Shown: piece after piece, positions 329-53,390 of the stretch | Position numbering within the stretch: position 1 is the first letter of the stretch | Layout of the letters: every line of letters starts with the position of its first letter | Virus record (IMG/VR): IMGVR_UViG_3300024259_000010 | Span: 1-64,000 of that record | Strand: one strand, 5' to 3' | Length of the DNA: 64,000 bases | The notes under the pieces: model-generated | What the model saw: only the letters and a program-made list of their open reading frames with translations | Databases searched by the model: none | What the model was told of the DNA's origin: nothing | Program-made: the position numbers and the translations under genes

Positions 329-3300
329 CCAGCCATACCAACTAGTCCACCACCAAGAACAAATTTACCAAGTTTGGATTTACCAAGCTTAGAGTTTTTG
401 ATCTTACCAGCAATACCTCTAGCAGCCATACCAGCTAATCCACCAGTAGCCATGAATCCAGCGACCTTACCAAACTTAGTTTTCTTAAACTTAGCAAACG
501 CACCTTCATTTTCAATACCTTCTTCTTCAGCCTTCTGTCCAGCTTCCCACTCTTCTTTATCCTTAGATTCAACATCTTCAGGATTAAGTTTGCCATCAGC
601 TTTAGCAGTCATAAACTTGTTAGCCATATTTTCAGCTTCATCACGTTTACCAGCTTTGAATAAAGATTTGAATTTCTTAATGAATTTTTTAGATGCATTC
701 TTTTCAGTTAAAGTATCAACCCAGTTATCTAATTGTTGATCAGCGTAAGCACCAGCGGCCATCTTCTGAGCCTTCTCAGCTTTCTTACGAGCACGGCGCT
801 TCTTAAGTTTCTTAGCAAGTATAACACCACCTACAGCAACACCAGCAACAGCTAATGCAGGTAATAGGAATGGTGCGGCAGCAGCGGCAGCACCAGCAAT
901 GGCTGTACCAGCAGCAGCACCTGCTCCAGCAAGAGCAGTTCCAGCAGTAGCAAGACCTCCACCAATAGCACCAGCTCCAGGTATCATAGTAGCTAACCCT
1001 GCGGCTTTACTACCAAATCTACCAAGTGCCCCACCAATCTTTCCAAACTTACCTAGCTTACCAAGATTCTTGGCATTCTTACCAGCTTTCGCTAGCTTAG
1101 CAGCCTTCTTAAGTTTACGAGCATCATTCAAACCTTTGAGTGTATTACCAGTATCGATCGCTGCAGAGATACCCATACCAGCACTACCTATCTTACCTAG
1201 TAAACCAGGTTTGTTAGCTAGATTCTGCATACCACCTTTGAGCATACCTTTTGCATCAGTCATATTAGCAGGTACTTTAATTCCCCTACCTTCAGCCTTT
1301 GCCCGCATCTGATCTAAGTATGAACCTTTACGATGTACATCTTCTTCATAATCATCTTCAGCATCGTCAGCACTACCTTCATCATCCATAGGATTGGTTT
1401 TACTAGCAGTAACACCAGCACCAGCTTTACCTGTTGATCCAATAGTTGGAGAAGTTGTAGTAGGTTCACCTGTAGTTGCGCCTAACCGTGTGTTTAATAG
1501 TTCATACATAGTGGAATGGTTTTCATTAACGGCTGCAGTCAATTCTTCAACTTTAGCAGCAATACCTCCACTACCGAAACCCATATCACTTAGTTTGTCT
1601 TTAGCATATCCCATTGCTCCGAGACCTGCTTTACCTGCACCCTTAAGTATAGAGCCATAAACTCCAACACCACCAGACAACACATTAAGACCACTGCTTA
1701 GTAAACCACCAGCTCCAGCAAAAGCTCCACCTAGATCGATATGTATTCCACCACCTGCTCCATCATAAATGGATTTACCAGATACTGTAACTAGACCTTT
1801 TTCAATATCTTCTTCAGATACTAATACGTCTCCAGTTTCAGAATGAATAATAGGTGAGGTGATCTCAATTGTTTTCTTAAGTCTTTTTTTAGTCTCTGCA
1901 ACAAGACCATTCTTTTTCTGAACCTTAGCAGAAACTAGTGGACTACCAACTTTGACTTCATCTTTGATATATACATCGACAAAATTAGGTTGAACAGCTA
2001 AACCAGGAACTTTATCTACTAATGATTTAGCAAGACCGAATCCTCCTTTATAGAATTCTCCCATCATGTCTAAACCACTACCGGCTATATCACTACCACC
2101 TTTGGCTAATATACCAGCTAGATCTCCAAGTTTACCAACACCAGTTCCAAGAGCACTACCAATATGAGGAGCAGCTTGACCAGTTTTATCAGCAAGCCAT
2201 TTTCCAGCACCTTTAAGACCTTTACCATAAGTTGTAGCAACACCACCAATAGTTCGTCCAAGTTTTCCACCACCAGATTTAATACTATCTTTAGCACGTC
2301 TGGTAAGACTCTTAGTGATTTCCCACTTAGTATCTTTAATCATGTCGTCATCATCATAGCCTTCTAAACTTCCAGTTTTAGCGAATACTCTAAATGATTT
2401 ATGGAAACTCTTCATCTCTAGTAGTAATCTAGAACTACCAATAGTTTTATCTTGAACAGTACCGATTGCACCTAATGCCTGATCCTTTAAAGATACAGCA
2501 CCTTTTTTAAGACTATCAAAACCATACATGGATTTAATTGCCAAGGTTTCAGCCCCGGATGCAATCTTATCTCCAGCATACATTCCTTTAATCTGAGCTG
2601 TCTCTATACCAGATCTAGCTTTAGTCACATGACTGGATATATTCTTATCATAAAAGTCTTTAGATACGGTTCTATATTTAGTAAGCTTCTCTCTAACAGA
2701 TGCATTAGTAGCATCAACTGTTTTCATAAGTTTATCTTGGTCTTCTTCCGAGACAACCTTACTAATCTCTTTCATGATAACAGAGTTGATCTTTTTAACA
2801 CGATTGATAACAGATGGATCTTCATCTGGATCTAATTCAGCAGCTTTGTTTAATTCTTTTATTAAACTACCTACCTTCTTTTTAGATCTAGTTAGATCAG
2901 CTCTAAGTTCATCGGGAGTTTTGTTCAATTGAGTATCCACTGCATCAACTACTGATTTACCAGCACCTAATGCTTTGTCCTTAGCAGAGTTTCCAATACC
3001 AATAGCTTTTCGTTTAGCTGACATTCCAGCACTAGGCATAGGTCCAATAAAGTCAGGATCACTAGATGTGTTGCTATAAAGACCTTTCGCCTTTTTAACC
3101 CCTTGTTTAACACCATGTTTAGCTCTGTCAAATGTGTTTTTACCAGTACCCATGGCCATCTGTTTGATGGTCTGTTGTGGCATAGGTCCAACCATCTCAG
3201 GCATAGGTCCATAAAAATCACCAGAACTACTACCTGCAACATTAGAATACTCAGGTGTTTCAATTCTAATTGTCCCATCTGCATCAACAGAAATTGGAAC

Positions 3301-5442
3301 ATCACCAGATGCACCTGAAATATAAGATGCTAGATCTGATAGTAAGAATACATCTTTCTTAGCTAACTTACCAGCAGCGGTTTTAATACCGGATGGGATA
3401 TTCTGAGCAAATTTTGAATTGGTAAAATTCTCACGATCTTCTCGATAGATCATGCTTAAATCTTTTGTCTGTTGAGCTGCTCCACTTAGATAACTACCTG
3501 GATCATCAGAAAGAGAACTTTCTGCAATATTCAAACGTTCTTTATTGAGAGCATCTGTGGAAAACTGTCCACCATCTATATCATCAGCAAAAAGATTATA
3601 TGATCCAAATGTTTCCAATGTACTAGATAGTTTAGTTCTTAATGTATCATTAGCATGTGCATTATGAATACCATCATTGATAAAACTTATGTTTTCATTA
3701 TTTTTAGTACCATCAGGATTAAAATATAACGCCTTGATTAACTGGATAACTCCAATAGGGTCTTTAGTACCCTTCATCAATAATTTAATACCTCGTCCGG
3801 TCAGCTCTTCTGGTTTACTAGCAGCAGTTGCTTCTTTGATAACCCTTGCACTAATAGTAACACCATTGACAACAGCGTTGTTAATAACGATCAATAAATC
3901 TGCTTCTAATTCTTTATATGTGGATTCCTTGACAGTTGACGTCATTGCAGCTATACCTTTGATAGCACCCAATGATTCTACCATGGCTTGACCACGTTCT
4001 TCAGGAGCACCAAGCATAGATTCCATCACAGAAGCTTTAGCCTGAGTCATTGAAACGATTTTACGTTTCTTGGGATCATATGCTTCTATTTCAGTATCAG
4101 TACCAGTAACACTATCTCTAGTATTTTTAGCAATTTTAGATAACCATAGAGGTATGACTTCAACAATAGATTGACGAGTAGCGTTATCAAATACAGAGGC
4201 AGTTGCTCCTTCTTCAAATAATTGATTACCAACATCTACATGTGTCGTCTTCTTGGGTATCATGCTTCCGATTAATTTCAAAGCAATATTATCGGATTCA
4301 CTCAACGCATCGGCAAAGTCACGACCACCAGTTTTAATCTTACCTTGAACAGTTCTTGCTGTTCTATCGGCAACGTTAGCAATAGGTCTTATTTTATTAA
4401 GAGCAGATCTCCCACCGATCATACCAAGTATTGTACCAAGTGGACCACCGGCTTTCTCGCCTTTGCTTTTACCCATACCCAATTGATCAAAGTCGCCTTC
4501 CATGTCCCTTTCGACTTCCATGCTATCAATGAGCATATCGAGCATAGGAGCTAACTGTCCAATGTTATCAACCACATTTGATTTAAATCCTTTGGCAGCG
4601 CCTCCTACCATACCACTAATAGAATTAACACCAAGATCTGCAATCTTACCACGAACACTATGTTTTAAAAATTCAGCTGATTGTGCTTTTGCAACTTCAG
4701 GTAAGGCAGTGTTCTTACTAACAATAGCGATATTGTCTTCGAACGATTGTGCAAATACTTTCAATACACCAAGAGTTTCTTTAGAAGTATATAAGTGCAT
4801 ATACTTTAACTCAAGCATTTTCTTCATCCAGTCCTGCTGAGCAGAAACTGTATATTGATTTGAAAATTCTAACTGTGAGTTAATATTGGATAACATTCCA
4901 ATAGTGCTTCTATGTCTCAGTGAGTCACGGGCTTTGTCAACTAACTTATCAGCCCGAGCATGTTCATCTTTTGTCTTATTGGTACTAGCTATATTTGCAA
5001 ACATAGCTTCAGATGAAGCTCGTGCTACATTCTGTGCTTCAGAATATGCATCCTCAGCTTCAGCACCCGTTGATTCAGAAGAGGATTTGGAAAACTCTTC
5101 TAGCTTATTATACATGCCTTTTGGAATGAATCGTTTAGCAGTAGGTAAAGCAAATGCGGTAGCACGTTTTCCAACAATGGCAGCCTTACGTACTTCAGCA
5201 CGTAGTTCACCGAGTGATTCAACACCTATATCTTTTGCAGCACCTATGTCGCTTAATAACTCAGATGTATTAGGCATTGAACTTAAAATATGTTTACCAG
5301 CAGTTTTCATTCCAGCAGGTACACCTGCTTTAACTAAGTCTTTGGCATTGGAACCCAATCCCATTACTGGTTTTCTAGATTTAGGATCTATTGAATCAGA
5401 TGAATAATTACTGCTGAAATCATCAGCCATAAAACTATCCAT
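1..5442 (-). CDS. Large tail/tape-measure protein, phiKZ gp181-like (C-terminus beyond the window, >1814 aa)
   Basis: ATG at 5442 (alternative 5430). The frame was translated or spot-checked by hand to position 1 with no stop seen; it is absent from the ORF track because its stop is outside the window. Ala/Gly/Lys-rich, with FDNATRQSIVEVIPLWLSKI and VDVYIKDE segments resembling phiKZ gp181-type proteins, and a hydrophobic segment PFLLPALAVAGVAVGGVILA. Confidence 0.75.
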   Translation of the reverse strand, partial: MDSFMADDFSSNYSSDSIDPKSRKPVMGLGSNAKDLVKAGVPAGMKTAGKHILSSMPNTSELLSDIGAAKDIGVESLGELRAEVRKAAIVGKRATAFALPTAKRFIPKGMYNKLEEFSKSSSESTGAEAEDAYSEAQNVARASSEAMFANIASTNKTKDEHARADKLVDKARDSLRHRSTIGMLSNINSQLEFSNQYTVSAQQDWMKKMLELKYMHLYTSKETLGVLKVFAQSFEDNIAIVSKNTALPEVAKAQSAEFLKHSVRGKIADLGVNSISGMVGGAAKGFKSNVVDNIGQLAPMLDMLIDSMEVERDMEGDFDQLGMGKSKGEKAGGPLGTILGMIGGRSALNKIRPIANVADRTARTVQGKIKTGGRDFADALSESDNIALKLIGSMIPKKTTHVDVGNQLFEEGATASVFDNATRQSIVEVIPLWLSKIAKNTRDSVTGTDTEIEAYDPKKRKIVSMTQAKASVMESMLGAPEERGQAMVESLGAIKGIAAMTSTVKESTYKELEADLLIVINNAVVNGVTISARVIKEATAASKPEELTGRGIKLLMKGTKDPIGVIQLIKALYFNPDGTKNNENISFINDGIHNAHANDTLRTKLSSTLETFGSYNLFADDIDGGQFSTDALNKERLNIAESSLSDDPGSYLSGAAQQTKDLSMIYREDRENFTNSKFAQNIPSGIKTAAGKLAKKDVFLLSDLASYISGASGDVPISVDADGTIRIETPEYSNVAGSSSGDFYGPMPEMVGPMPQQTIKQMAMGTGKNTFDRAKHGVKQGVKKAKGLYSNTSSDPDFIGPMPSAGMSAKRKAIGIGNSAKDKALGAGKSVVDAVDTQLNKTPDELRADLTRSKKKVGSLIKELNKAAELDPDEDPSVINRVKKINSVIMKEISKVVSEEDQDKLMKTVDATNASVREKLTKYRTVSKDFYDKNISSHVTKARSGIETAQIKGMYAGDKIASGAETLAIKSMYGFDSLKKGAVSLKDQALGAIGTVQDKTIGSSRLLLEMKSFHKSFRVFAKTGSLEGYDDDDMIKDTKWEITKSLTRRAKDSIKSGGGKLGRTIGGVATTYGKGLKGAGKWLADKTGQAAPHIGSALGTGVGKLGDLAGILAKGGSDIAGSGLDMMGEFYKGGFGLAKSLVDKVPGLAVQPNFVDVYIKDEVKVGSPLVSAKVQKKNGLVAETKKRLKKTIEITSPIIHSETGDVLVSEEDIEKGLVTVSGKSIYDGAGGGIHIDLGGAFAGAGGLLSSGLNVLSGGVGVYGSILKGAGKAGLGAMGYAKDKLSDMGFGSGGIAAKVEELTAAVNENHSTMYELLNTRLGATTGEPTTTSPTIGSTGKAGAGVTASKTNPMDDEGSADDAEDDYEEDVHRKGSYLDQMRAKAEGRGIKVPANMTDAKGMLKGGMQNLANKPGLLGKIGSAGMGISAAIDTGNTLKGLNDARKLKKAAKLAKAGKNAKNLGKLGKFGKIGGALGRFGSKAAGLATMIPGAGAIGGGLATAGTALAGAGAAAGTAIAGAAAAAAPFLLPALAVAGVAVGGVILAKKLKKRRARKKAEKAQKMAAGAYADQQLDNWVDTLTEKNASKKFIKKFKSLFKAGKRDEAENMANKFMTAKADGKLNPEDVESKDKEEWEAGQKAEEEGIENEGAFAKFKKTKFGKVAGFMATGGLAGMAARGIAGKIKNSKLGKSKLGKFVLGGGLVGMAGRKIAGSKAGKAIGKFGKKMFDRSLPGLALKGIKKADKGLGKAIDDPKAALKKTGKFLATGGLVGMGARKIAGSKAGKAIGKFGKKMFDRSLPGLALKGIKKADKGLGKA

Positions 5443-5461
5443 ATTCTCTTCTTTAAACTTA

Positions 5462-6259
5462 TTATTTTTCATAAGTAATATCCATTATTACAAACTTAAA
5501 ATCACAAAATGCATTGAATACAATTTCAGTATTCTGCAATATCTGATCATCAGTTAATTTTTCGTCACCAGGCTTAACATCTTGCACTTCCTCAATAAAT
5601 GGAAATGTATGTAGTGATTTATGTACAAGTAATGTTCCAGCTTCTAGCAGAGGTTGAAATCTCCCGTGCTCCATAAACTTACCCAATTTATAGATAGACA
5701 TGTGGTCTAGGGTTGTTACAATCTCTTCACCATAATCATATATTTGGGGATCAGTTATAGTGATGTTCCAATATGACAATTCTTTTTTAAGACAAGCGAT
5801 TAATTTATCCTTACCTTCAAGTGACAATTTAACATCACCTGATCCGATGAATAGTTGAGGTACAACATTAGCATCACTACCCATTCTATTATTACCTAAA
5901 ACAGCATCGCCGAATTTAAAAAAGTATTTATAATAATCAGTAGGTGGGCTAATACGTTCTAGCTTTGCATGATTATCAGTGTCTTGCATAAATGCATATA
6001 TATCTTCATCTGTAAATTTTAGTTTAGGGAAATATTTCATAACTTTATCTTCTCTGCGATCATTATAATTCGACAGATTAGCTAGTAGATAATCATACTC
6101 TTCTTTGCTAGATATAAGACTCAATAATGCACCTATTCTAAAATCAAAAAAACAATCCAGATCAACATACAGCACACCTACTGGTGCAACTATATCTTCC
6201 ATTGCTGCACCGGCTATTGATTGTAATGAGGCTGCCACATCTCCAGACATTTTTTCCAT
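5462..6259 (-). CDS. Conserved phiKZ-like hypothetical protein
   Basis: ORF; GGAG RBS before ATG 6259; LYVDLDCFFDFRIGAL resembles a motif common in phiKZ-like phage proteins. Confidence 0.65.
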   Translation of the reverse strand: MEKMSGDVAASLQSIAGAAMEDIVAPVGVLYVDLDCFFDFRIGALLSLISSKEEYDYLLANLSNYNDRREDKVMKYFPKLKFTDEDIYAFMQDTDNHAKLERISPPTDYYKYFFKFGDAVLGNNRMGSDANVVPQLFIGSGDVKLSLEGKDKLIACLKKELSYWNITITDPQIYDYGEEIVTTLDHMSIYKLGKFMEHGRFQPLLEAGTLLVHKSLHTFPFIEEVQDVKPGDEKLTDDQILQNTEIVFNAFCDFKFVIMDITYEK

Positions 6260-6382
6260 AATTTCTCTCCGTTTTTTATCCATATAATGGGCTTTATTGA
6301 CATTTTTTAAAAACATAAATAATCATTTAATGTACTATAATTATAAAAATTTTTAGATTACAAAATATTAAAGGAGATTGTC

Positions 6383-6739
6383 ATGGATATTACAGAGGTA
6401 CAAGAAAAAGAATTATTAACAGATAGATTCACTAAACGTTATTCAAGTGTTAACTCACTTATTACATTTTTGATTGCTACCGATGATTATATTACAGTGG
6501 GCGATATTTTGGATGTTGTAAATAACCAAGGGCAGTTCGAATACTTGGACGACGCTGATATTGAAATGGTAGTAGGGTTTGATAAACCTGCTTCTGATAA
6601 CCAAGTTTTATTCGCATTAGTAGATCTTGAATCATGGGGTCTTATTGAAAATATTAAGACTATGGAAGATGGAGTGGAAGTTACTTACATTCGGTGGGGA
6701 ACTAATGATAAAGGTGAACTTCCTACTGTAGCTGAATAA
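6383..6739 (+). CDS. Hypothetical protein
   Basis: 118-aa ORF with AAGGAG RBS. Confidence 0.8.
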   Translation: MDITEVQEKELLTDRFTKRYSSVNSLITFLIATDDYITVGDILDVVNNQGQFEYLDDADIEMVVGFDKPASDNQVLFALVDLESWGLIENIKTMEDGVEVTYIRWGTNDKGELPTVAE

Positions 6740-6740
6740 T

Positions 6741-7070
6741 ATGAAATTTATAATTTGCACAATGATGGATGCTGAGCCGATGACAAAATCTGAGGCTCAG
6801 ATGAAAATCCACGGTAAAGAATTACCAAAGGATGTGTTAGATGAGGATGGGTATTTGGTTAGCTATCCTAATGATCTATCAACTTGGTATAACAAAGAGT
6901 CTTTCTTAAGAAAAGCTTTCCCATTGAATGATGGCGATATGATAACAACTGAGGATGTAAATAAGTTTCATGAAACCTCCACATATTTCACTGGAGATAA
7001 GACTATGACAACACATGTCTTAAATGTTATAATGAAATGGACGAGAGGCACATTGTTTAAAAATAAATAA
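6741..7070 (+). CDS. Phage hypothetical protein (AEPMT...GYLVxY..W domain)
   Basis: 109-aa ORF; motif resembles a widespread small phage domain. Confidence 0.65.
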   Translation: MKFIICTMMDAEPMTKSEAQMKIHGKELPKDVLDEDGYLVSYPNDLSTWYNKESFLRKAFPLNDGDMITTEDVNKFHETSTYFTGDKTMTTHVLNVIMKWTRGTLFKNK

Positions 7071-7128
7071 TTTTGATTAATAGTATACCTAGTATATATA
7101 AGTGGATATCTCATGTCTATTATAAGTA

Positions 7129-7136
7129 TATATTAC
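7129..7136 (+). promoter_or_regulatory. phiKZ-type early promoter TATATTAC
   Basis: Exact match to the published phiKZ early promoter consensus; intergenic, upstream of a plus-strand gene; one of 19 copies found. Confidence 0.8.
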
Positions 7137-7181
7137 TTTTTTGTATCAATGAATATAAACTATAATCAAAAGGATATCCGT

Positions 7182-7646
7182 ATGGATGACAATAAATTAA
7201 ATATTATTAAAGATGCGATTAAAACTGTTGTTGAAGCTGAAGTTGGAGTAGATGTTCTATATCCTATTTTATTTACTACTAAATTTGGTATTGATCGTAA
7301 AGTGGCTGCGCTTGCATACACTATGCGTGTTGATAAAGAAGAACTTGTTTCCATCTTACCTAAGCGTGCTGAAGGAGAAGGTGTTAATGCTAGAGCATCT
7401 ATTGCGGTTCTTGTGGAGCTAATCAGAAAAGCACGTGGTTTTGAACCTAAGCCTGCAAAGGTTAAGACAGATAAACCTACTGAGGAAAAACCAGTAACAC
7501 ATAAGTGTGACTGTGGTGCCTGTATGTGTGATAAGGATCATAAATCTCTTGGGGGAGATGATGACTCTATTGAAGAAGGTATTCCTCTGACCGCAGATAA
7601 TGCATCTTTACCAGAAGAAAAGGAAGCTGAACTTATTGCTGAATAA
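7182..7646 (+). CDS. Hypothetical early protein
   Basis: AAGGA RBS before ATG 7182; downstream of the promoter. Confidence 0.75.
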   Translation: MDDNKLNIIKDAIKTVVEAEVGVDVLYPILFTTKFGIDRKVAALAYTMRVDKEELVSILPKRAEGEGVNARASIAVLVELIRKARGFEPKPAKVKTDKPTEEKPVTHKCDCGACMCDKDHKSLGGDDDSIEEGIPLTADNASLPEEKEAELIAE

Positions 7647-7730
7647 ATATGTATGAACAGCCACCATTTAACCATATAAGATTGTCAAATAAATGTTTCA
7701 TAGAACAGGGGTGATTTAAGATAGAAAGTA

Positions 7731-7814
7731 GGCCGCATGGCGGAATGGCAGACGCAACGGTCTTAAAAACCGTTTTCTTCGGAAGTGTGAGTTCGACTCT
7801 CACTGTGGCTACCA
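7731..7814 (+). tRNA. tRNA-Leu(UAA)
   Basis: Acceptor GGCCGCA/TGTGGCT, D arm GCGGAATGGCAGACGC, anticodon arm ACGGT-CTTAAAA-ACCGT, long variable arm, TTCGA T loop, encoded CCA. Confidence 0.95.
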
Positions 7815-7819
7815 ACTAT

Positions 7820-7875
7820 CTTAAAATCTGTCGACTATTGCAGTCGTGTCGGTTCGATTCCGGCCTTGGGTACCA
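7820..7875 (+). pseudogene. Orphan 3' half of a second tRNA-Leu(UAA)
   Basis: CTTAAAA loop, variable arm, T arm GTCGG-TTCGATT-CCGGC, CTTGGGT-A-CCA; no matching 5' half nearby. Confidence 0.75.
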
Positions 7876-7893
7876 AAATGTTATTCTAGTTAA

Positions 7894-8384
7894 GTCGGAG
7901 CGTAACGTTATACATTAATTAGTAGCGATAGGACGCTAAGACAAAACTACGATGAAACTCACAAGCTGATAAACCAGAGTATATTCCTTTCTATGATTTG
8001 GAATGAATTGATACTAGATATGTCTGGTTGTTTTATCTATTACGATGATATCTTAAGATTGATTCGTGATGCATTTATTATAATCCTAAAGGATCTTATG
8101 ATAGATGTAAAGACCTGATCGCAGATCCAAAAGATGGGCGCGATTTGGGCAACCCAGCCAAGAATGCAACTGCTTGGTGTCGTTTGACTTAATAGACGGG
8201 TTATATACGTCATGTGTTGTGGTAACGGTTCTATGGACGCATAGACTGGTCGACGGTGGTTCCGGTTATAACCAAGGATTGAGAGGGAAGATGTGGGTGC
8301 CAATGTTATCAAGGATTATTGCAATACGTTGTAGTGATCAGATATTACGCATCATTCGAACACGCCCCTACCTCGCTCTCCGAC
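7894..8384 (+). ncRNA. Candidate ~490-nt structured ncRNA (RNA-A), family unassigned
   Basis: 5'/3' closing helix, many internal hairpins, terminator directly after; only weak short ORFs overlap. Confidence 0.6.
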
Positions 8385-8391
8385 CTTTTTA

Positions 8392-8428
8392 AATACTTCT
8401 ACCTCAATCGGGTAGGAGTATTCTTTTT
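8392..8428 (+). terminator. Rho-independent terminator
   Basis: TACTTCTACC/GGTAGGAGTA stem plus T-rich tail. Confidence 0.8.
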
Positions 8429-8467
8429 ATATCTGTTATCAAATTAATCAATAAATAAGGAAGAACA

Positions 8468-8725
8468 ATGGCTAAGAAGAAAGAACAAGGACCAAGAATT
8501 TCAGCATGTGGTACACATAAACACATGATCAATGAACGCTTAACTGAAGCTGTTATCAATGAAGGCAAGATCGTATGTAAAGACTCTAAAGGTTTTTATG
8601 TAACTACTGCTCGTGAAATTGATAGTGGTCTTATGGACCCTAATCGTCAGAAGTGTACTCGTGTGCGGGATAATGAACTCGCCGCTGAAGGTATTGTTAT
8701 CGGTACTACTCATAATGCAGATTAA
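8468..8725 (+). CDS. Hypothetical protein
   Basis: 85-aa ORF, AAGGAAG RBS. Confidence 0.75.
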   Translation: MAKKKEQGPRISACGTHKHMINERLTEAVINEGKIVCKDSKGFYVTTAREIDSGLMDPNRQKCTRVRDNELAAEGIVIGTTHNAD

Positions 8726-8843
8726 AGAAGTATGGGATAAATGCGCCCAAGAAGAAAAAGATAAGCTTTTTAAAATAGGATGGTTTTCTTTAATAGGAAT
8801 TCTTATTGCATGTGGTGCACTTGTTATATTTTACAAAGGATAG
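8715..8843 (+). CDS. Small membrane protein (42 aa)
   Basis: ATG 8715; hydrophobic segment GWFSLIGILIACGALVIF. Confidence 0.55.
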   Translation: MQIKEVWDKCAQEEKDKLFKIGWFSLIGILIACGALVIFYKG

Positions 8844-8846
8844 TTT

Positions 8847-9389
8847 ATGAAAATAGAAATACTCACACCATTATTAGTACGCTGTCGCCGATATGGAATC
8901 TCATTTGATTATGGATGGGATGATGAAACTGATACATACAGATTAAAGCTATTCATAAATAAGACTAAAGTATATGATACTGGTCCGACTATGGAAATAG
9001 AAGCTGGTGTGCAGGAAGCTATTAAACGCATTGATAAAGAAAATGAAAATGGTGATCTTAATAACCATACTAATGTTATCGATGCTACTATTAATGTAGA
9101 TAAAGAAGATTCTGAGTTATTCCACAAGATCAAGGAAACTATTGGATTCTTACTTGGTGTACCTGAGAAAAAGATTACATTGAAATCAAGTATCGTAGAA
9201 GATCTTAAAGCTAATTCATTGGATTCAGTTGAATTGATCATGCAGATTGAAGAAGACTTTGGTGTTACTATCTTGGATGAGGACGCTGTTAAAATTAAGA
9301 CAGTGGAAGATATCTATAATTGGGCGGTAGCATATGGCTCACCTAGTTGTCGAGTACTTGCTGTAACTAAGATAACCAAAATAGATTAA
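8847..9389 (+). CDS. Acyl carrier protein domain fused to an unknown N-terminal domain
   Basis: EDLKANSLDSVELIMQIEEDFGVTILDEDAVKIKTVEDI matches the AcpP consensus except DSL is NSL. Confidence 0.85.
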   Translation: MKIEILTPLLVRCRRYGISFDYGWDDETDTYRLKLFINKTKVYDTGPTMEIEAGVQEAIKRIDKENENGDLNNHTNVIDATINVDKEDSELFHKIKETIGFLLGVPEKKITLKSSIVEDLKANSLDSVELIMQIEEDFGVTILDEDAVKIKTVEDIYNWAVAYGSPSCRVLAVTKITKID

Positions 9390-9446
9390 TTAAGAATATG
9401 CAAATCTTGCTTTCAAAAAGTGAGTTTAATAATTTATATCCCTGAG

Positions 9447-9830
9447 TATAATAAGTTGGTTATGCGGATTGCTTGTTTGCGGTCGGCCTGCTTATAACTA
9501 ATTGGGGTATATAAAATCCATGATGTACCGGCGTATCCTTCGGGGTACATTACCCACGTCATGGTCTAGTATATTGATTACTTGTTATTGTAACCCATAC
9601 GAGGGTTATTAGAGTATACGGTATCATGTTGATGATTCCTTGCCTGAAGACGGGCAAGTGGAGACAGTACTAAACAATATGCAAACCAGTAAACAGTCTG
9701 GCAGAACGGGGAGCAACTAGCCCGCCAGATGAGGACCTATACATTATTTATAGGAGGGTCGGGAGCAGTGGCCTTTTAAATCACTATCATGAAAAACAAT
9801 GATAGCACTGCCACCAATTTATTGATTATA
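9447..9830 (+). ncRNA. Candidate ~385-nt structured ncRNA (RNA-B), family unassigned
   Basis: 11-bp closing helix (9450-9460/9813-9823), at least 7 internal stems, no ORF of 60 aa or more on either strand, terminator follows. Confidence 0.65.
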
Positions 9831-9870
9831 AGATACTACTGGATTGTCCAGTAGTATCTTATATATTTTT
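9828..9870 (+). terminator. Long hairpin terminator
   Basis: Perfect 16-bp IR ATAAGATACTACTGGA/TCCAGTAGTATCTTAT plus T-rich tail. Confidence 0.8.
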
Positions 9871-9893
9871 TAAAAATTAAAAAGGAGTATTAT

Positions 9894-10181
9894 ATGAAAT
9901 ATGTAATTGTAAATGATGGATGGGATACAGACCCAGTACCATGTGCTCATGTCTTCTCAGAAGAGATTGGTCACAAAATGGTTGTGGATATGAATACCCA
10001 AGTTATGAGCGCAGGTTTCTGTAATGTAGTGGACGGTCGAATGATTGTTCAAGTTGGTCGTCCTTCTGATTCATTAAATATTGGACCTGCACCTAATGAT
10101 GGAGATCTTCTAACAAAATTAATCCTCCAAGGCAAAGAGCCTATGGATATTGTACGTGAGCGAAGGGATGCTAATGAATAA
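9894..10181 (+). CDS. Hypothetical protein
   Basis: 95-aa ORF, AAGGAG RBS. Confidence 0.8.
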   Translation: MKYVIVNDGWDTDPVPCAHVFSEEIGHKMVVDMNTQVMSAGFCNVVDGRMIVQVGRPSDSLNIGPAPNDGDLLTKLILQGKEPMDIVRERRDANE

Positions 10182-10695
10182 AATAACTAAAATGAAATTA
10201 TGTGTATGGTGGTTCCATCGTGGTCAGAAATATGGTGAGTTGCCATACACATTCCACTTAAATCAATGTTTTGATAGACTACTTGGTTTACACTGTGTAG
10301 ACGTAGATCTACTATGTGCTATGCTTGGTCATGATCTATTTGAAGATACGAAATGTTATTATGCATTTGTTGAAAAACATTTTGGATATCGTGTAGCAGA
10401 GTTGATCAAGGGTATGACTAAGAGTCAAGGAGCTGATTATACGAAGTATGTCAAATCTATTACAAAGAGGACTGAATATCGTAAGGATGTTATGATCCTT
10501 AAAATGATTGATAATATTTGTAACCATACTAATAGTTACATGACTCGTGACCGTAGACGTATGACTAAGTATGAAGGTTCGTTAGGTATATTGCGAGAAA
10601 CATGTGATATGTTATTACATACCAAATCTATATCTGAAATGGATGCGTTACATCAGTTAATAGCGTCTATGGCAGTCCCGACAATTGAGGAATAA
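10174..10695 (+). CDS. HD-domain hydrolase, RelA/SpoT (Mesh1 / small alarmone hydrolase)-like
   Basis: HRGQKYGELPYTFH, GHDLFEDT and KMIDNICN match SpoT-type HD motifs. Confidence 0.8.
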   Translation: MNKITKMKLCVWWFHRGQKYGELPYTFHLNQCFDRLLGLHCVDVDLLCAMLGHDLFEDTKCYYAFVEKHFGYRVAELIKGMTKSQGADYTKYVKSITKRTEYRKDVMILKMIDNICNHTNSYMTRDRRRMTKYEGSLGILRETCDMLLHTKSISEMDALHQLIASMAVPTIEE

Positions 10696-10712
10696 ATTAA
10701 AGAAAGAAAAAT

Positions 10713-10952
10713 ATGAATGATCATGAAATTTTATTAAAACATTATACCATACGTAGAGGTAGTAATGTAATATTCTTTATAATGAATGGTATGTTCACAT
10801 TAGGGTTTGCATATTTATTACCTGCGATAACGGTTGAGTATAATCCAATCACACCATTACCATGTATGCTTGTATGTATATATTTTGGTATAAAGTATAT
10901 ATATACTAATCGTATATGTAAAGAATTAACGAATAAATTAAAAGGAATATAA
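10713..10952 (+). CDS. Membrane protein (2 TM)
   Basis: 79-aa ORF with two hydrophobic segments. Confidence 0.7.
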   Translation: MNDHEILLKHYTIRRGSNVIFFIMNGMFTLGFAYLLPAITVEYNPITPLPCMLVCIYFGIKYIYTNRICKELTNKLKGI

Positions 10953-10953
10953 T

Positions 10954-11358
10954 ATGAAAATTACTGGAGAAATGAAGTCCAAAATAGTATTTGGATTAAT
11001 TATATCAGTATGTGTATTAATTGGAGTATATTGTCTGATCAATATTAATCTCCCATCGAGTGATACTGTTATTTATCGTGTCTCAAACTTGGTAGAAGAA
11101 ACATCACGTGATGTATCATCTACTAGTCGTAAAGAAATTATCGACATGTATGAGATTGAATTAAATAAAGGCATTGCATTAGTTGAAGATATTATTGTCG
11201 AAGAGGAAGTAACCTTCTCTCACCGATGGAGATATAAGAGATTAATGGATAGACTTGAAACAGTTGATAAACTAGATCGACTATATATAGATCTTGCCAG
11301 TATGCAAGAATCAGTTTCTCATTGTAGGATTACGAGGAAACATGTTGAAAAAGAATAA
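10954..11358 (+). CDS. Membrane-anchored hypothetical protein
   Basis: 134-aa ORF with an N-terminal TM segment. Confidence 0.7.
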   Translation: MKITGEMKSKIVFGLIISVCVLIGVYCLININLPSSDTVIYRVSNLVEETSRDVSSTSRKEIIDMYEIELNKGIALVEDIIVEEEVTFSHRWRYKRLMDRLETVDKLDRLYIDLASMQESVSHCRITRKHVEKE

Positions 11359-11476
11359 ACAATCATGTGGTAGATGTGGTGGACAACTACCAAACCGATG
11401 TTATATCAATTAATATCAGATGGTGTCAAGTTCTGTATACCAAAGAAATATAAGTAATTCATTTAGTTTTTAAGTA

Positions 11477-11484
11477 TATATTAC
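11477..11484 (+). promoter_or_regulatory. Early promoter TATATTAC
   Basis: Exact motif, intergenic. Confidence 0.8.
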
Positions 11485-11525
11485 TTTATTGCAATCTGGA
11501 CATAACTTCAGAGGAGGAATAAATT

Positions 11526-11630
11526 ATGAGTAAATTATATGACGATGACCCATTGGACACTACTAATTATACACCATCTGACGATGACCGTCAAGATGAA
11601 CAACAAGATGGCGAAGACGCTTTGGATTAA
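11526..11630 (+). CDS. 34-aa acidic micro-protein MSKLYDDDPLDTTNYTPSDDDRQDEQQDGEDALD
   Basis: Strong GAGGAGG RBS right after the promoter; below the ORF-track cutoff. Confidence 0.65.
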   Translation: MSKLYDDDPLDTTNYTPSDDDRQDEQQDGEDALD

Positions 11631-12497
11631 ACTCGTTTGGGTGAGTATAAACCGATGTGGATCGGACTCTGTAAATCAAACAACAATATGTAAGTCACTA
11701 GTACACGGTATCATTCCAGTGAGTAGGTGGCTATAAACAGTTAGAAATATCTGTAGCTCGAAACTATGAGCAGAGCATATGTTGATGTATGTAAGAGTAG
11801 CTTATTAGGCCCAACAGCGTTGAGAGAAGAGTTACCTACCACTTACCTAGTGGATGGACGAACCTACCAGGTTCAAACTTCTCTCAGGATAAGAATCACC
11901 TATGTTGTGTTATGAACTGCCTGTACCTAATCGGGTGGATTGTAACATAACCTCTAATAACGTCGAAAGACTTGATCTATTATAGATCAACGGGAATAAC
12001 TAAGAGTAGGGGATAAGTCTGCTATAAGGACTCTTAGAAAAACCTGTGTCATCTTGATGCCTTATCGAGATGGTTGTGTGATGCTTTAACCGGGAGACTT
12101 AGAAGGAATATCTATGTCAGATCAGCAAGCGGTTAAGGTTTAAATATAGATGCTCATTAAGCACAAGGTGATAGCTTCATCTATGTGAGCAGTTGGTTAT
12201 TTCAAGAGTTGGAGTTTAGCGAGTTAGCACTTATCGTGTGAGCGTTTGCTCCAACCCTTGACCTATTTTATAAATCTCTTGATCTTTAATAATGATGTGG
12301 TACTTGTATACCAAATGTTTATGTCATTGTTATTGATCGGGCTCCACGTCTACGTCCTTTCATACTACGTAACGTCGGGTTAAGTAAACACAAAAAGAGA
12401 GAGTAAATCCTAGCCCTGGTTAGGTTGAGTCATCAGTGGATATTACAATAAGTTCTAAACATTGTAGTTGTGATATCCTGTTTCGGCACCTGATGAC
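11631..12497 (+). ncRNA. Candidate giant (~870 nt) structured ncRNA (RNA-C), family unassigned
   Basis: At least 15 stems with G-U pairs and nested multi-stem domains; no ORF of 60 aa or more from 11737 to 12590; ends in a terminator. Confidence 0.72.
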
Positions 12498-12526
12498 AAG
12501 AAACTTCTAATAGTTTCTTTTTTTTA
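12498..12526 (+). terminator. Rho-independent terminator
   Basis: AAGAAACT/AGTTTCTT plus poly-T. Confidence 0.75.
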
Positions 12527-12547
12527 ATTTCATGTGTTATTTAGGTA

Positions 12548-12555
12548 TATATTAC
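12548..12555 (+). promoter_or_regulatory. Early promoter TATATTAC
   Basis: Exact motif, intergenic. Confidence 0.8.
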
Positions 12556-12590
12556 TTTTATGAGAAAGCATTTTAAATGAAAGGAATACT

Positions 12591-12923
12591 ATGCGTAGAA
12601 AACATAAACTTAAATTACAAAGAAAATTCTCTATTATAGATAGATTATTATATCGTAAAGTATTTAACTGTAATGATTCCAAATTAGTACTTGTTGATAT
12701 GGTCACCGCATGTATTAAGTATCGTAGTGAAATATTGAAGTTATATAAACTGGCTAAGATACAATGTGATTATGAATTTACTATGGAGCAACCAGAATCT
12801 CTAGAAGGTCTATATAATGAATTATGTTATATATCAGATCGATTTGGATGCATACATCGTATACAATTGATGTTAAATACACCAGAGTACTATGATAATT
12901 TAAACACGATGTTGGAGGAATAA
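12591..12923 (+). CDS. Hypothetical protein
   Basis: 110-aa ORF, AAGGA RBS. Confidence 0.75.
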   Translation: MRRKHKLKLQRKFSIIDRLLYRKVFNCNDSKLVLVDMVTACIKYRSEILKLYKLAKIQCDYEFTMEQPESLEGLYNELCYISDRFGCIHRIQLMLNTPEYYDNLNTMLEE

Positions 12924-12925
12924 CT

Positions 12926-13255
12926 ATGTCATTAGTAACACCATATGTAGATGAGAAAACACAGAAGCTTCATATACTACGATCTCTAATAATGAATTAC
13001 TATGCTGTTGAAGGTCATGGTACAGGTGGTAGTTTACATATTGTACTAGATGATCATAATTACGAACGCACTCATATTAAATTCTGCCTGGATGAGGCTA
13101 AGAAATGTAAAGATCTTATGGGTATTGAAATAGCAACTCGTATGCTTGAGTTCTCTGATGAAGAGAATAAAGTATTGGTAGAAACAGGTTGGGAAATTGA
13201 TGAGTTAATAGGTAGTTCATATAAAGCAGCCTACATCATGGCATATAAGAAATAG
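12926..13255 (+). CDS. Phage hypothetical protein (GGSLHIVLDD motif)
   Basis: 109-aa ORF, GGAGG RBS. Confidence 0.75.
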   Translation: MSLVTPYVDEKTQKLHILRSLIMNYYAVEGHGTGGSLHIVLDDHNYERTHIKFCLDEAKKCKDLMGIEIATRMLEFSDEENKVLVETGWEIDELIGSSYKAAYIMAYKK

Positions 13256-13269
13256 AAAGTATTGAATAG

Positions 13270-13773
13270 ATGGAAATAAAGATACACTACGATTTTACAG
13301 ATGGTACTGAACTTAGTTATGTAGAAGGTCTTGAAGCTATTGATTTAAATCTAAGCTTTACTACTAACTGCTTTGAGTTCTTTACCTCTGATAGATCATG
13401 TGAAGTGATTGTAGAGAAAGCCAGTGGTCGTTATATATCTATGCAGGAAGTTCTTGCTAATGATAATTTTTATACACGTAAGCATATTCGTAAGGCACAT
13501 AACCTACGCAAGATGTTAGTAGCTGGTGGTTTTAAATGGAAGGGTGATATAATTTCCCCTAACCAACAGATGATAAATACTATAGACCCTCTTATACTTA
13601 ATCAGTTTAACGATACAGAAGGACGTGGATTGAAAGACCATGAGATTGGTGCATTGGTAAATGTATTATCTATACATCTTAGTAAGTATATTAAGTTGGG
13701 TTTCTTACGAGAAGCTATATCAACTGTAACTAAGAAGTTTCTTAATGACACAGGACTTAGATATAACAATTAA
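13270..13773 (+). CDS. Phage hypothetical protein
   Basis: 167-aa ORF. Confidence 0.75.
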   Translation: MEIKIHYDFTDGTELSYVEGLEAIDLNLSFTTNCFEFFTSDRSCEVIVEKASGRYISMQEVLANDNFYTRKHIRKAHNLRKMLVAGGFKWKGDIISPNQQMINTIDPLILNQFNDTEGRGLKDHEIGALVNVLSIHLSKYIKLGFLREAISTVTKKFLNDTGLRYNN

Positions 13774-13784
13774 AGGAAACACCA

Positions 13785-14372
13785 ATGATACAAAGTATTA
13801 CATTTGCAAAGGAACTCTTTTGTTTCAAAGTAGGAGATTCATATGACTTCAAACCATTAACATTATTGGTCGGAGATCAAGGGTGTGGTAAAAGCACTAT
13901 ACTGAATCTATTGGGTAAGCAAGGTATGTATGGTAGTACGCAAATGGTAAACATTGAAGTTGGTAAGAATGACAATGGTTTCATTCACCATGATTTTGAA
14001 ATGGCTAGTCATCGTACTAATACTAGCGGACCAAATCCATACTCACCTGATTACAATGACCAGTTGATTAGAATGATTGATTCTAAGTCTATGTCTCACG
14101 GTGAAGCCACTAAGGTTTCCTTTGAAGATTTTGATAGAATTGAAACAGATATTCTTATATTGGATGAACCCGATATGTCACTGTCTATGCGAAGTGTACA
14201 TATGTTAGTGGAACATGTTAAACGATGGATTGATTCAGGTAAGCAAGTTATCTTGAGTTGTCATCATCCGTATCTTATAGAAGCTTTTGATGAAGTATTA
14301 TCCTTGGAACATAAACAATGGATGTCATCTAAAGAATTTATAGAATCACATAATTTAAAGATGGACCTGTAG
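13785..14372 (+). CDS. ABC/AAA-type ATPase
   Basis: Walker A GDQGCGKS, signature-like SHGE, Walker B ILILDEP, H-loop SCHH. Confidence 0.88.
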   Translation: MIQSITFAKELFCFKVGDSYDFKPLTLLVGDQGCGKSTILNLLGKQGMYGSTQMVNIEVGKNDNGFIHHDFEMASHRTNTSGPNPYSPDYNDQLIRMIDSKSMSHGEATKVSFEDFDRIETDILILDEPDMSLSMRSVHMLVEHVKRWIDSGKQVILSCHHPYLIEAFDEVLSLEHKQWMSSKEFIESHNLKMDL

Positions 14373-14439
14373 CTCAGTTGGTCAGAGCAGGACACTCATA
14401 ATGTCTTGGTCGGGGGTTCAAGTCCCTCCGGGTCCACCA
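14363..14439 (+). tRNA. tRNA-Ile2(CAU) (lysidine type; elongator Met not excluded)
   Basis: Acceptor GGACCTG/CGGGTCC, anticodon arm GGACA-CTCATAA-TGTCT, overall pattern like E. coli ileX, encoded CCA. Confidence 0.9.
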
Positions 14440-14632
14440 ACTTTTAGACAACACTAAGTATCGGCGAGAGAACGGTGTGGGGGAACAACACTATATAAGT
14501 GCCCTCTGTCTATTTCAATTTTATTGATAATACTAATCCAAACTTCAAATATATAAAAAAGAGAGATAGGGTTAGGTTACATGAAACGAAAGGTATAAAA
14601 CTAAATCAATAAATAGAAACAAAGGAAACAAC

Positions 14633-14935
14633 ATGAGCGAACAAACAAAGAAATACCCACGACATCATATCACACTCAGCGACGGATCTTTATTATCATT
14701 ATCTGTTAATAAGAATCCGATACCTGATTGGGAACATATTGTGGAGGCATTTCCTAAAATCGTAAATACTGTAACTTTGGGAGAACTTGTCAAGAGGATT
14801 GATGATATCAATACCGACACGGTAGAGTATCACAATACTATTGATGAGGCTACTGATAAGTTCACTGGTGCAGGTGAAGAATATTACCTGTACACTGATT
14901 CATGTGATCGTCAACAACGCGTTGACGTGAGTTAA
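14633..14935 (+). CDS. Hypothetical protein
   Basis: 100-aa ORF, AAGGA RBS. Confidence 0.75.
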   Translation: MSEQTKKYPRHHITLSDGSLLSLSVNKNPIPDWEHIVEAFPKIVNTVTLGELVKRIDDINTDTVEYHNTIDEATDKFTGAGEEYYLYTDSCDRQQRVDVS

Positions 14936-14942
14936 TCAAAAC

Positions 14943-14976
14943 GTAGTCACTCTCCCTTAATTGGGAGAGTGACTAC
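14943..14976 (+). terminator. 14-bp hairpin, probable terminator
   Basis: GTAGTCACTCTCCC/GGGAGAGTGACTAC. Confidence 0.6.
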
Positions 14977-15001
14977 ACCTATTTAATCGAATGGAGATAT
15001 T

Positions 15002-53308: not shown

Positions 53309-53390
53309 AATCCACAATAATTACTGCCTCCACGCGGCGTGGGTTGGATACTATACTTAGGTATAGGCTAAATGTAATAAGAAAGGAATA

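What the first reader, a model, noticed from the sequence alone, without database searches (positions are those of the whole stretch)
7894..8428. RNA-A: ~490-nt RNA with a closing helix downstream of the tRNA-Leu locus
GTCGG-AGCG (7894-7902) pairs with CGCT-CT-CCGAC (8374-84). Internal stems include TAGCG/CGCTA (7923-38), nested GATAAA+CCAGA+ATTCC/GGAAT+TCTGG+TTTATC (7968-8037), CCAAG/CTTGG (8158-77) and CTATG-GACG-CATAG (8231-44). There is a possible long-range ACTCACA/TGTGGGT pairing (7957/8292). A terminator starts 8 nt after the helix. GATGAAACTC loosely echoes RNase P CR-I, but CR-V is not recognisable. Size and tRNA adjacency recall ROOL; this is unverified.
Basis: partly seen in the sequence, partly recalled or inferred. 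Interest (0 to 1): 0.75.

Follow-up and report, generated by a model that had tools for sequence, protein, structure and literature searches.

The report
Orphan ORF-less tail after phage tRNA-Leu
The flagged stretch is a real protein-free ~0.5-kb spacer between a tRNA-Leu gene and a transcription terminator in a marine jumbo phage, but it is not ROOL or RNase P RNA, its proposed closing helix does not hold up, and no relatives exist to show that it is a conserved structured RNA.

Summary
The window is the first 64 kb of a 236-kb seawater jumbo-phage contig. Three parts of the proposal fail.

- **Closing helix:** it is no better than chance (41% of shuffles do as well). A second natural allele, seen in several samples, deletes its 5' strand.
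- **Overall fold:** without the terminator the fold is not unusually stable (z -1.3).
- **Known families:** no Rfam family, including ROOL and RNase P, matches even at E<=10.

The stretch is non-coding. All six frames are closed by all three stop codons. The overlapping ORFs have non-coding codon usage and no homologues.

It lies in one transcription unit: phage promoter motif (7126), small gene, tRNA-Leu(UAA), remnant of an older tRNA-Leu, RNA-A, terminator.

The two alleles give weak, mixed support for local hairpins: one compensated hairpin, two to three G.U to A-U changes, and two broken pairs. No homologue was found in any collection, and five related phage lineages lack it.

Best reading: a species-specific, tRNA-linked non-coding transcript tail made of local hairpins. 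It is analogous to T4 RNAC/RNAD and phage K lncRNAs, and no function is shown. Two neighbouring ORF-less stretches (9390-9863, 11632-12525) look more strongly structured.

The parts
7101..7136 (+). Phage-specific promoter-like motif (extended upstream element, then GTATATATTAC at 7126-7136)
   Evidence: About 40 copies with at most 1 mismatch, nearly all on the + strand upstream of genes and sharing an extended upstream consensus. In the window there are 8 exact copies on the + strand, while 2-mismatch copies are near chance level (73 found against 61 expected). No copy with at most 1 mismatch lies between 7136 and 11474.
7182..7646 (+). Small gene (154 aa from ATG 7182; the 177-aa ORF from 7113 overlaps the promoter motif)
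   Evidence: Homologues P0004-P0006 start at residue 24 of the 177-aa ORF. Codon score is 0.97. The family has only 6 proteins in 5.8 billion.
7731..7814 (+). tRNA-Leu(UAA), the newer copy
   Evidence: ARAGORN and Rfam, 55.6 bits.
7815..7877 (+). 3' remnant of an older tRNA-Leu(UAA): anticodon loop, variable arm, T arm, acceptor 3' strand and CCA
   Evidence: Identical to the 3' 60 nt of the intact tRNA-Leu of allele L004. The L004-type joint is seen in runs X3 and X4.
7878..8391 (+). RNA-A body: ORF-less stretch, 39% G+C against 34% for the genome
   Evidence: All six frames carry TAA, TAG and TGA stops. ORF codon scores are -0.24 to +0.24, within the wrong-frame null of -0.09 +/- 0.32, while 8 of 9 neighbouring ORFs score 0.30-0.97. 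No Pfam, PHROG or tblastn hits. No Rfam hit.
7894..7942 (+).
   Evidence: 51-nt indel. The local fold GUC / AGCGU / CGUUAU pairing with GUAGCG / ACGCU / GAC appears in the MFE and the centroid.
7951..8037 (+). Hairpin domain closed by GAUGAAAC/GUUUUAUC, with inner hairpin 7983-7987/8000-8004
   Evidence: Consensus fold of both alleles. G7954.U8034 becomes A-U. The inner stem ATTCC/GGAAT becomes GCTCC/GGGGT with all 5 pairs kept. A7978-U8024 is broken in L004.
8039..8108 (+). Two adjacent hairpins (8039-8070 and 8071-8108); the only part with a clearly non-random local fold
   Evidence: 120-nt windows starting at 8000 and 8040 give z -2.9 and -3.1 on the + strand against -0.15 and -0.65 on the minus strand. 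The hairpins are present in the MFE, the centroid and the consensus.
8274..8387 (+). Long irregular 3' hairpin domain with inner hairpin 8314-8339
   Evidence: Consensus fold. G8321.U8332 (pair probability 1.0) becomes A-U in the other allele. G8297 is G.U to A-U in the consensus fold but G-C to A.C in the window-only MFE.
8392..8430 (+). Intrinsic terminator: 13-bp stem, 5-nt loop, T-run
   Evidence: Identical in all alleles. No promoter motif follows it before the gene at 8468.

Best explanation
RNA-A is the untranslated 3' tail of a tRNA-carrying phage transcript. It is not a closed, ornate RNA of a known family.

Transcription starts at the phage promoter motif at about 7126. It runs through a small gene (7182-7646), tRNA-Leu(UAA) (7731-7814), the remnant of an older tRNA-Leu (to 7877) and the 514-nt ORF-less stretch, and ends, at least partly, at the intrinsic terminator 8392-8422.

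Excision of the tRNA by the host's tRNA-maturation nucleases would release a roughly 0.5-kb RNA whose 3' end is capped by the terminator hairpin. The RNA is best described as a chain of local stem-loops, some of them modular (one is an indel between alleles), with no long-range closure. The promoter-less genes downstream (8468-9389) would depend on read-through of this terminator.

Shown: non-coding nature, gene order, terminator, promoter motif, two alleles, absence from relatives, no match to any Rfam family.

Inferred: co-transcription, release by tRNA processing, hairpin chain, read-through. No specific trans-acting function is shown. The nearest functional analogues are the tRNA-region RNAs of unknown role in T4 (RNAC/RNAD) and the tRNA-adjacent lncRNAs of phage K.
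For: - Non-coding.
- One unit: promoter motif at 7126, with the next copies only at 11474 and 12545. In allele L004 the tRNA starts 9 nt after the stop codon of the upstream gene, which leaves no room for its own promoter. The only terminator-like site reported on either strand in 7000-9500 is at 8392-8422, on the + strand.
- Strand: local z-scores favour +, and the G.U pairs 7954/8034 and 8321/8332 are possible only on +.
- Hairpin chain rather than closure: consensus fold; closing duplex at chance level; its 5' strand is a deletable, self-folding module.
- Local hairpins tolerated by both alleles: 6 of 6 variable pairs kept in the consensus, against 1-3 of 6-9 with slid partners.
- Precedent: T4 RNAC/RNAD from the tRNA region, roles unknown (PMC3014915, PMC9697503); phage K and ICP1 lncRNAs (PMC9241854, PMC7567579).
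Against: - No transcript data: no RNA run was listed.
- Without the terminator the fold is not more stable than shuffles (z -1.30).
- The consensus fold was fitted to both alleles. With the window-only MFE only 5 of 12 variable pairs survive in L004, and T8119A and G8297A break high-probability pairs.
- The compensated inner hairpin consists only of transitions, so chance retention is about 0.04-0.25 (my estimate).
- All three SNPs between alleles downstream of 8005 lie in RNA-A and none in about 690 nt of adjacent coding DNA, so there is no sign of stronger constraint than on genes.
- No homologue exists in any searched collection, so conservation cannot be shown.
Confidence: 0.45

Rival explanations
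1. Evolutionary debris. The stretch is a non-functional spacer left by recombination in a hypervariable tRNA island, possibly a gene or tRNA cluster decayed beyond recognition. It is carried along only because it sits between a needed tRNA and a needed terminator.
For: - The site is demonstrably recombinogenic. A tRNA was replaced leaving a 60-nt remnant, there is a 51-nt indel, and a 35-nt block was swapped between alleles.
- Five related lineages have tRNA-Asn, tRNA-Arg plus other spacers, or protein genes at this position, and none has RNA-A.
- SNPs concentrate in it rather than in the flanking genes.
- The global fold is not significant.
Against: - Phage genomes rarely keep 0.5 kb of useless DNA (91% of this one falls in ORFs by my rough greedy call).
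- G+C is above the genome mean.
- No residual similarity to any protein, including the relatives' neighbouring genes, or to tRNA.
- The hairpins at 8039-8108 are non-random.
Confidence: 0.28
2. A dedicated large structured trans-acting RNA of a new family, functionally comparable to ROOL or GOLLD. It would be one of three such RNAs (with 9390-9863 and 11632-12525) in this early gene row.
For: - Size, phage location and tRNA adjacency match the known habits of ROOL and GOLLD (PMC5737381, PMC7567579).
- Raised G+C.
- A modular hairpin indel, one compensated hairpin, and G.U to A-U changes.
- The two neighbouring ORF-less regions fold well beyond chance (z -3.1 and -4.9).
Against: RNA-A itself has z -1.30. 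There is no long-range helix beyond chance, no homologues at all, and two natural changes break predicted pairs.
Confidence: 0.14
3. A cis-acting leader or attenuator. RNA-A plus the terminator would tune read-through into the promoter-less genes 8468-9389, for example through alternative pairings of the repeated CUACCUC element (8368-8374 and 8401-8407) with the terminator's 3' strand.
For: There is no promoter motif between the terminator and the next genes. The CUACCUC repeat is visible in the sequence. The same layout occurs at 9827-9863.
Against: About 500 nt is far longer than known attenuators. No riboswitch, T-box or leader family matches. The proposed alternative pairing is my inspection only and has no comparative support.
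Confidence: 0.08
4. Protein-coding or recoded. One of the overlapping ORFs, the 33-aa ORF at 8291-8392, or a stop-codon-reassigned gene is translated.
For: A weak GAGGG lies 3 nt before ATG 8291.
Against: All three stop codons occur in every frame. Codon scores are at the non-coding level. Both SNPs inside the 33-aa ORF are non-synonymous (sequence). No family or homologue matches.
Confidence: 0.04
5. A divergent member of ROOL, RNase P RNA or another Rfam family.
For: Only the size and the tRNA adjacency.
Against: cmscan of 1.1 kb against all 4227 families at E<=10 returns only noise snoRNA hits. RF03087 and RF00010 find nothing in the whole phage (the RNase P control rang in 11 of 14 genomes). 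The CR-I-like motif is not invariant even within the species.
Confidence: 0.01

Closest known systems
T4 RNAC and RNAD (stable RNAs of the T4 tRNA region)
   Same: Non-coding RNAs encoded beside phage tRNA genes and transcribed with them, with unknown function (PMC3014915, PMC9697503).
   Different: The T4 RNAs are much shorter (about 120-140 nt, from my own knowledge). There is no sequence relation. Expression of RNA-A is not shown.
Phage K (Kayvirus) lncRNAs and the ICP1 ~800-nt ncRNA
   Same: Orphan, ORF-less, several-hundred-nt regions of lytic phages. The phage K RNAs are tRNA-adjacent and abundantly transcribed (PMC9241854, PMC7567579).
   Different: Those are backed by RNA-seq and RNA-A is not. 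No homology. ICP1 has no tRNAs.
ROOL RNA (RF03087)
   Same: Roughly 0.5-0.6 kb, found in phages, often near tRNA genes (PMC5737381, PMC7567579).
   Different: No covariance-model match. ROOL comes mainly from rumen samples and Firmicutes (my own recollection), whereas this is a marine jumbo phage. No evidence for a conserved ornate fold.
Bacterial RNase P RNA (RF00010/RF00011)
   Same: Only a loose echo of CR-I (GATGAAACTC) and a comparable length.
   Different: No model match. No CR-V. The echo varies between alleles and is predicted to be base-paired.

Membership tests
ROOL (RF03087) | Match to the ROOL covariance model (574 positions, gathering score 99.1 bits) | tested here: not met
   No hit at E<=10 in 7600-8700 or in the whole 236-kb phage. 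In one search the control genomes did not ring either, so one search is the valid test.
ROOL (RF03087) | Location in a phage or prophage near tRNA genes; length about 0.5-0.6 kb | tested here: met
   It starts 64 nt after tRNA-Leu and directly after a tRNA remnant. Length is 514 nt, or about 550 nt with the terminator.
Bacterial RNase P RNA (type A/B) | Match to RNaseP_bact_a/b models; conserved CR-I to CR-V and the P4 pseudoknot | tested here: not met
No hit (the control rang in 11 of 14 genomes). The CR-I-like GATGAAAC carries a natural G-to-A change and pairs with GTTTTATC.
GOLLD, HEARO/omega RNA, OLE, group I and II introns, tmRNA, 6S, riboswitches, leaders | Match to the respective Rfam covariance model | tested here: not met
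   cmscan against all 4227 families at gathering threshold and at E<=10. I did not confirm the accession of each family in the library; I assume from memory that all of those listed here are in Rfam 15. Of them, one search checked a group II domain model only.
tRNA-linked phage stable RNAs (T4 RNAC/RNAD type) | Encoded in a phage tRNA region on the tRNA strand, within the same transcription unit | tested here: met
   Same strand, no intervening promoter motif or terminator. In allele L004 the tRNA abuts the upstream gene.
tRNA-linked phage stable RNAs (T4 RNAC/RNAD type) | Accumulates as a discrete processed RNA in infected cells | not testable with these tools
   No RNA run was listed for this sequence. 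The host is unknown.
Conserved structured RNA (any new family) | Homologues with statistically supported covariation | tested here: inconclusive
Only two alleles exist. In the fitted consensus 6 of 6 variable pairs are kept. In the window-only MFE 5 of 12 are kept.
Protein-coding gene | Open frame with the phage's codon usage, or homologues | tested here: not met

The most novel reading that the evidence does not exclude
RNA-A, together with the two neighbouring ORF-less stretches (9390-9863 and 11632-12525), could be a set of previously undescribed large structured RNAs. A marine jumbo phage would make them early in infection from tRNA-linked or mRNA-linked precursors. That would be a marine counterpart of ROOL and GOLLD, with modular peripheral hairpins.
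Probability: 0.13. Interest if true: 0.65.

Novelty: new member of a known kind. Interest (0 to 1): 0.3.

Why it matters
If RNA-A accumulates as a discrete RNA, it adds a marine jumbo-phage example to the small, unexplained group of tRNA-linked phage non-coding RNAs: T4 RNAC/RNAD, phage K lncRNAs, and ROOL/GOLLD near tRNAs. The two alleles would then offer a natural deletion of one hairpin module for study.

As it stands, the practical value is mostly negative. It should not be annotated as ROOL or RNase P RNA, and the proposed closed fold should not be used as a model.

The neighbouring regions 9390-9863 and especially 11632-12525 are better candidates for a structured phage RNA.

Tried and rejected
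**Homologue searches, all empty or returning only the source**
- blastn against 50,697 phage records found only tRNA similarity.
- IMG/VR scans with three RNA-A 19-20-mers and a tRNA-Leu variable-arm pattern gave 0 hits.
- A JGI metagenome 20-mer scan found only the source contig.
- GTDB genome scans gave 0 hits.
- Neighbouring proteins were tried as anchors. The 85-aa and ACP-like proteins have no homologues beyond themselves. The upstream protein family has 6 members, and their contigs (L007-L014, L016-L019, 42 kb) show no RNA-A by nhmmer or blastn.
- RecJ used as an anchor found no close relatives in IMG/VR.

**Other checks that led nowhere**
- Paralogues in the phage itself: none.
- RNA runs: none listed.
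- Reads from four seawater runs show only the two alleles.
- Stop-codon recoding is rejected.
- A decayed orthologue of the relatives' genes is rejected.
- Decayed tRNA genes inside RNA-A are rejected; the only tRNA-clan signal at E<=10 is in the remnant at 7848-7864.

**Corrections to my own earlier readings**
- Two apparent 'gaps' at 1661 and 3992 turned out to be part of a giant minus-strand gene.
- My first SNP test used a wrong coordinate (7951 instead of 7954) and was corrected.
- RF01998 is a group II intron domain, not GOLLD as I had recalled.

**Not attempted**
- A covariance model of RNA-A was not built, because no sequence set was left in which it could find anything new.

Full report
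**Context.** The window is bases 1-64000 of a 235,833-bp IMG/VR virus record (34% G+C, CheckV 91% complete) from a seawater metagenome.
- It carries three tRNAs and a tmRNA.
- Its large proteins have only distant relatives, at about 23-27% identity, among cultured jumbo phages.
- Window bases 1-5472 belong to a giant minus-strand gene of 2628-2695 aa that runs off the window start.
- From about 6380 onward the genes are on the + strand.

**The observation.** The hairpin with a T-run at 8392-8422 is the only terminator-like site reported on either strand in 7000-9500. tRNA-Leu(TAA) is at 7731-7814.

The statistical support is weaker than it first looks.
- The 546-nt stretch including the terminator gives z = -3.05 on the + strand and -1.59 on the minus strand.
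- Without the terminator (7878-8391) the z-score is -1.30, and 11 of 100 shuffles fold as well. The minus strand gives -1.18.
- In 120-nt windows only those starting at 8000 and 8040 are clearly non-random and strand-specific (z -2.9 and -3.1 on +, against -0.15 and -0.65 on minus). These correspond to the hairpins 8039-8070 and 8071-8108.
- The proposed closing helix is not special. The best duplex between the 5' 40 nt and the 3' 60 nt is equalled by 41% of 1000 dinucleotide shuffles. It scores high in the ensemble only when the sequence is cut exactly at its ends.

**Non-coding nature.**
- All six frames of 7878-8467 contain TAA, TAG and TGA stops, so stop-codon reassignment cannot open a frame.
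- I trained a codon log-odds score on 97 long ORFs of the phage. The ORFs and frames inside RNA-A score between -0.24 and +0.24. All lie inside the wrong-frame null (-0.09 +/- 0.32). Of nine neighbouring ORFs, eight score 0.30-0.97; the 65-aa ORF at 11539-11736 scores -0.30 and is probably not a gene.
- No stop-free piece of 30 aa or more matches Pfam at a meaningful level. PHROGs, scanned with five listed ORFs of the region (41-89 aa), also gave nothing. The two long ORFs have no tblastn match in phages. The language-model 'recognition' of the longest piece is in the range of shuffled sequences.
- The only start with a Shine-Dalgarno-like element is ATG 8291 (33 aa). It has non-coding codon usage, and both natural SNPs in it are non-synonymous.

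**Known RNA families.** cmscan of the whole window at gathering thresholds, of 7600-8700 at E<=10, and of 1-15000 at E<=1 returns nothing inside 7878-8430 except chance snoRNA-level hits. Whole-phage searches with ROOL (RF03087) and RNaseP_bact_a find nothing. The RNase P control rang in 11 of 14 reference genomes, but the ROOL control did not ring, so one search is the operative ROOL test. RNA-A is not a member of ROOL, RNase P RNA or any other curated family.

**Transcription context.**
- A phage-specific motif occurs about 40 times, almost only on the + strand and 40-60 nt before start codons. It consists of an extended upstream element followed by GTATATATTAC. The window has eight exact copies.
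- One copy lies at 7126-7136. This is inside the nominal 177-aa ORF. The homologues start at residue 24 of that ORF, so the real start is ATG 7182.
- The next copies are at 11474 and 12545, and none lies in between.
- In the second allele the tRNA begins 9 nt after the stop codon of the upstream gene.
- The simplest reading is a single unit: promoter, gene 7182-7646, tRNA-Leu, RNA-A, terminator. The promoter-less genes at 8468-9389 would be fed by read-through. This is inferred, because no RNA run could be listed.

**Two natural alleles.** Contigs carrying the identical downstream 85-aa protein and contigs of four seawater runs show exactly two forms. L004, and the same joints in X3 and X4, differs from the window as follows.
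- **(a) tRNA replacement.** Window 7648-7819 is replaced by 39 nt. L004 therefore has one intact 'old' tRNA-Leu(TAA), while the window has a different, complete tRNA-Leu followed directly by the last 60 nt of the old one (7815-7877).
- **(b) 51-nt indel.** Window 7892-7942 is absent from L004. This segment contains the 5' strand of the closing helix and the TAGCG/CGCTA hairpin, and it folds on itself as an independent stem-loop. The closing helix is therefore neither conserved nor the preferred partner of its own 5' strand.
- **(c) Swapped hairpin tip.** The tip at 7978-8003 is replaced by a diverged block. A7978-U8024 of the CCAGA/TCTGG stem is lost.
- **(d) Point changes.** These are G7954A, G7965A, T8119A, G8297A and G8321A.

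**What the alleles say about structure.**
- In the RNAalifold consensus, six variable pairs are all kept (7954.8034, three in the inner hairpin, 8297.8353 and 8321.8332). With 3' partners slid by 1-3 columns, only 1-3 of 6-9 are kept.
- That consensus is fitted to both alleles. With the fold predicted from the window alone, only 5 of 12 variable pairs survive. T8119A breaks a pair of probability 0.99, and G8297A breaks a G-C pair.
- The compensated hairpin consists only of transitions, so I estimate its chance retention at 0.04-0.25.
- All three SNPs downstream of 8005 fall in RNA-A and none in the adjacent 690 nt of coding DNA. This looks like a recombination tract rather than special constraint.
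- The net result is weak, mixed support for some local hairpins on the + strand and none for a global fold.

**Search for homologues.**
- Nothing similar exists elsewhere in the phage, in 50,697 phage records, in IMG/VR, in JGI metagenomes apart from the source contig, or in GTDB genomes.
- A pattern from the distinctive variable arm of the old tRNA-Leu finds nothing either.
- The downstream 85-aa and ACP-like proteins have no homologues among 5.8 billion proteins.
- The upstream protein has five relatives. What follows the gene on their contigs is:

| Locus | What follows the gene |
|---|---|
| L007 | tRNA-Asn |
| L008-L011 | tRNA-Arg, small genes, a tRNA-Leu(TAA) 84% identical to the old remnant, and other spacers with tRNA-like pieces |
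| L012-L014, L016-L019 | Protein genes |

- None of these contains RNA-A, and none of their proteins maps onto it.
- RNA-A is therefore confined to one phage species, inside a fast-changing tRNA island. A proper covariation test is impossible with present data.

**Interpretation.**
- **Best reading (0.45).** A non-coding, terminator-capped transcript tail. It would be released by tRNA processing and is built from local hairpins. It is analogous to T4 RNAC/RNAD and the phage K lncRNAs (PMC3014915, PMC9697503, PMC9241854, PMC7567579), and no function is demonstrated.
- **Debris (0.28).** The same DNA as evolutionary debris of the tRNA island.
- **Genuinely new ornate RNA (0.14).**
- **Attenuator for the downstream genes (0.08).**
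- **Coding (0.04).**
- **Known Rfam family (0.01).**

**Verdict.**
- The ROOL and RNase P idea is rejected.
- The closing helix is rejected.
- The label 'non-coding RNA downstream of tRNA-Leu' is plausible but unproven.
- Interest is modest at 0.3. It would rise only with transcript data or newly found homologues.
- The neighbouring ORF-less regions are stronger candidates and deserve their own follow-up: 9390-9863 (z -3.1 without its terminator) and 11632-12525 (z -4.9).

Noticed in passing
window 9390-9863 (+): A second ORF-less stretch of about 0.47 kb after the ACP-like gene. It ends in a 17-bp terminator (9827-9863). It folds better than shuffles even without the terminator (z -3.09). No Rfam hit, no homologues, and all stop codons occur in all frames.
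   Followed up: partly
window 11632-12525 (+): A third ORF-less stretch of about 0.9 kb, the most strongly structured of the three (z -4.94 without its terminator). It is preceded by a promoter motif at 11474 and a 34-aa acidic ORF (11527-11631) with a GAGGAGG Shine-Dalgarno sequence. It is followed by a terminator near 12499-12525 and the next promoter at 12545. The listed 65-aa ORF at 11539-11736 has non-coding codon usage. No Rfam hit.
   Followed up: partly
window 7647-7877; L004 164-262: tRNA-Leu(UAA) gene replacement polymorphism. The window allele carries a different complete tRNA-Leu plus 84 nt of new upstream DNA, followed directly by the last 60 nt of the old tRNA. The other allele has the old tRNA intact. 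Both forms occur in several seawater samples.
   Followed up: yes
whole phage, e.g. window 7126, 11474, 12545, 19420, 34864, 51312, 51836, 58702: A conserved promoter-like motif (extended upstream element, then GTATATATTAC) in about 40 copies, almost all on the + strand 40-60 nt before start codons and often right after a T-run. Its spacing does not fit sigma-70, so it may serve a phage-specified polymerase or sigma factor.
   Followed up: partly
window 52880-53309 (+): Phage-encoded tmRNA (Rfam 100 bits) with the unusual tag peptide GTKVINFPSARALAA.
   Followed up: no
window 46348-47886 (+): A 512-aa ORF that joins an N-terminal thioredoxin domain to a C-terminal dUTPase domain. About 280 residues of unassigned sequence lie between them.
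   Followed up: no
window 1-5472 (-): The start of the window is the 5' part of a giant minus-strand gene (2628-2695 aa in fuller contigs) that runs off the window. The + strand ORFs listed there are spurious.
   Followed up: partly
L008 6921-7165: In a related phage, the spacer after tRNA-Leu holds what looks like a tRNA 5' half (about 6921-6953) and a tRNA-like gene at 7047-7119. Rfam scores the latter at 49 bits with anticodon loop CUUAUAA, but ARAGORN missed it. A terminator follows. This shows that the locus is a decaying and renewing tRNA island in the lineage.
   Followed up: partly
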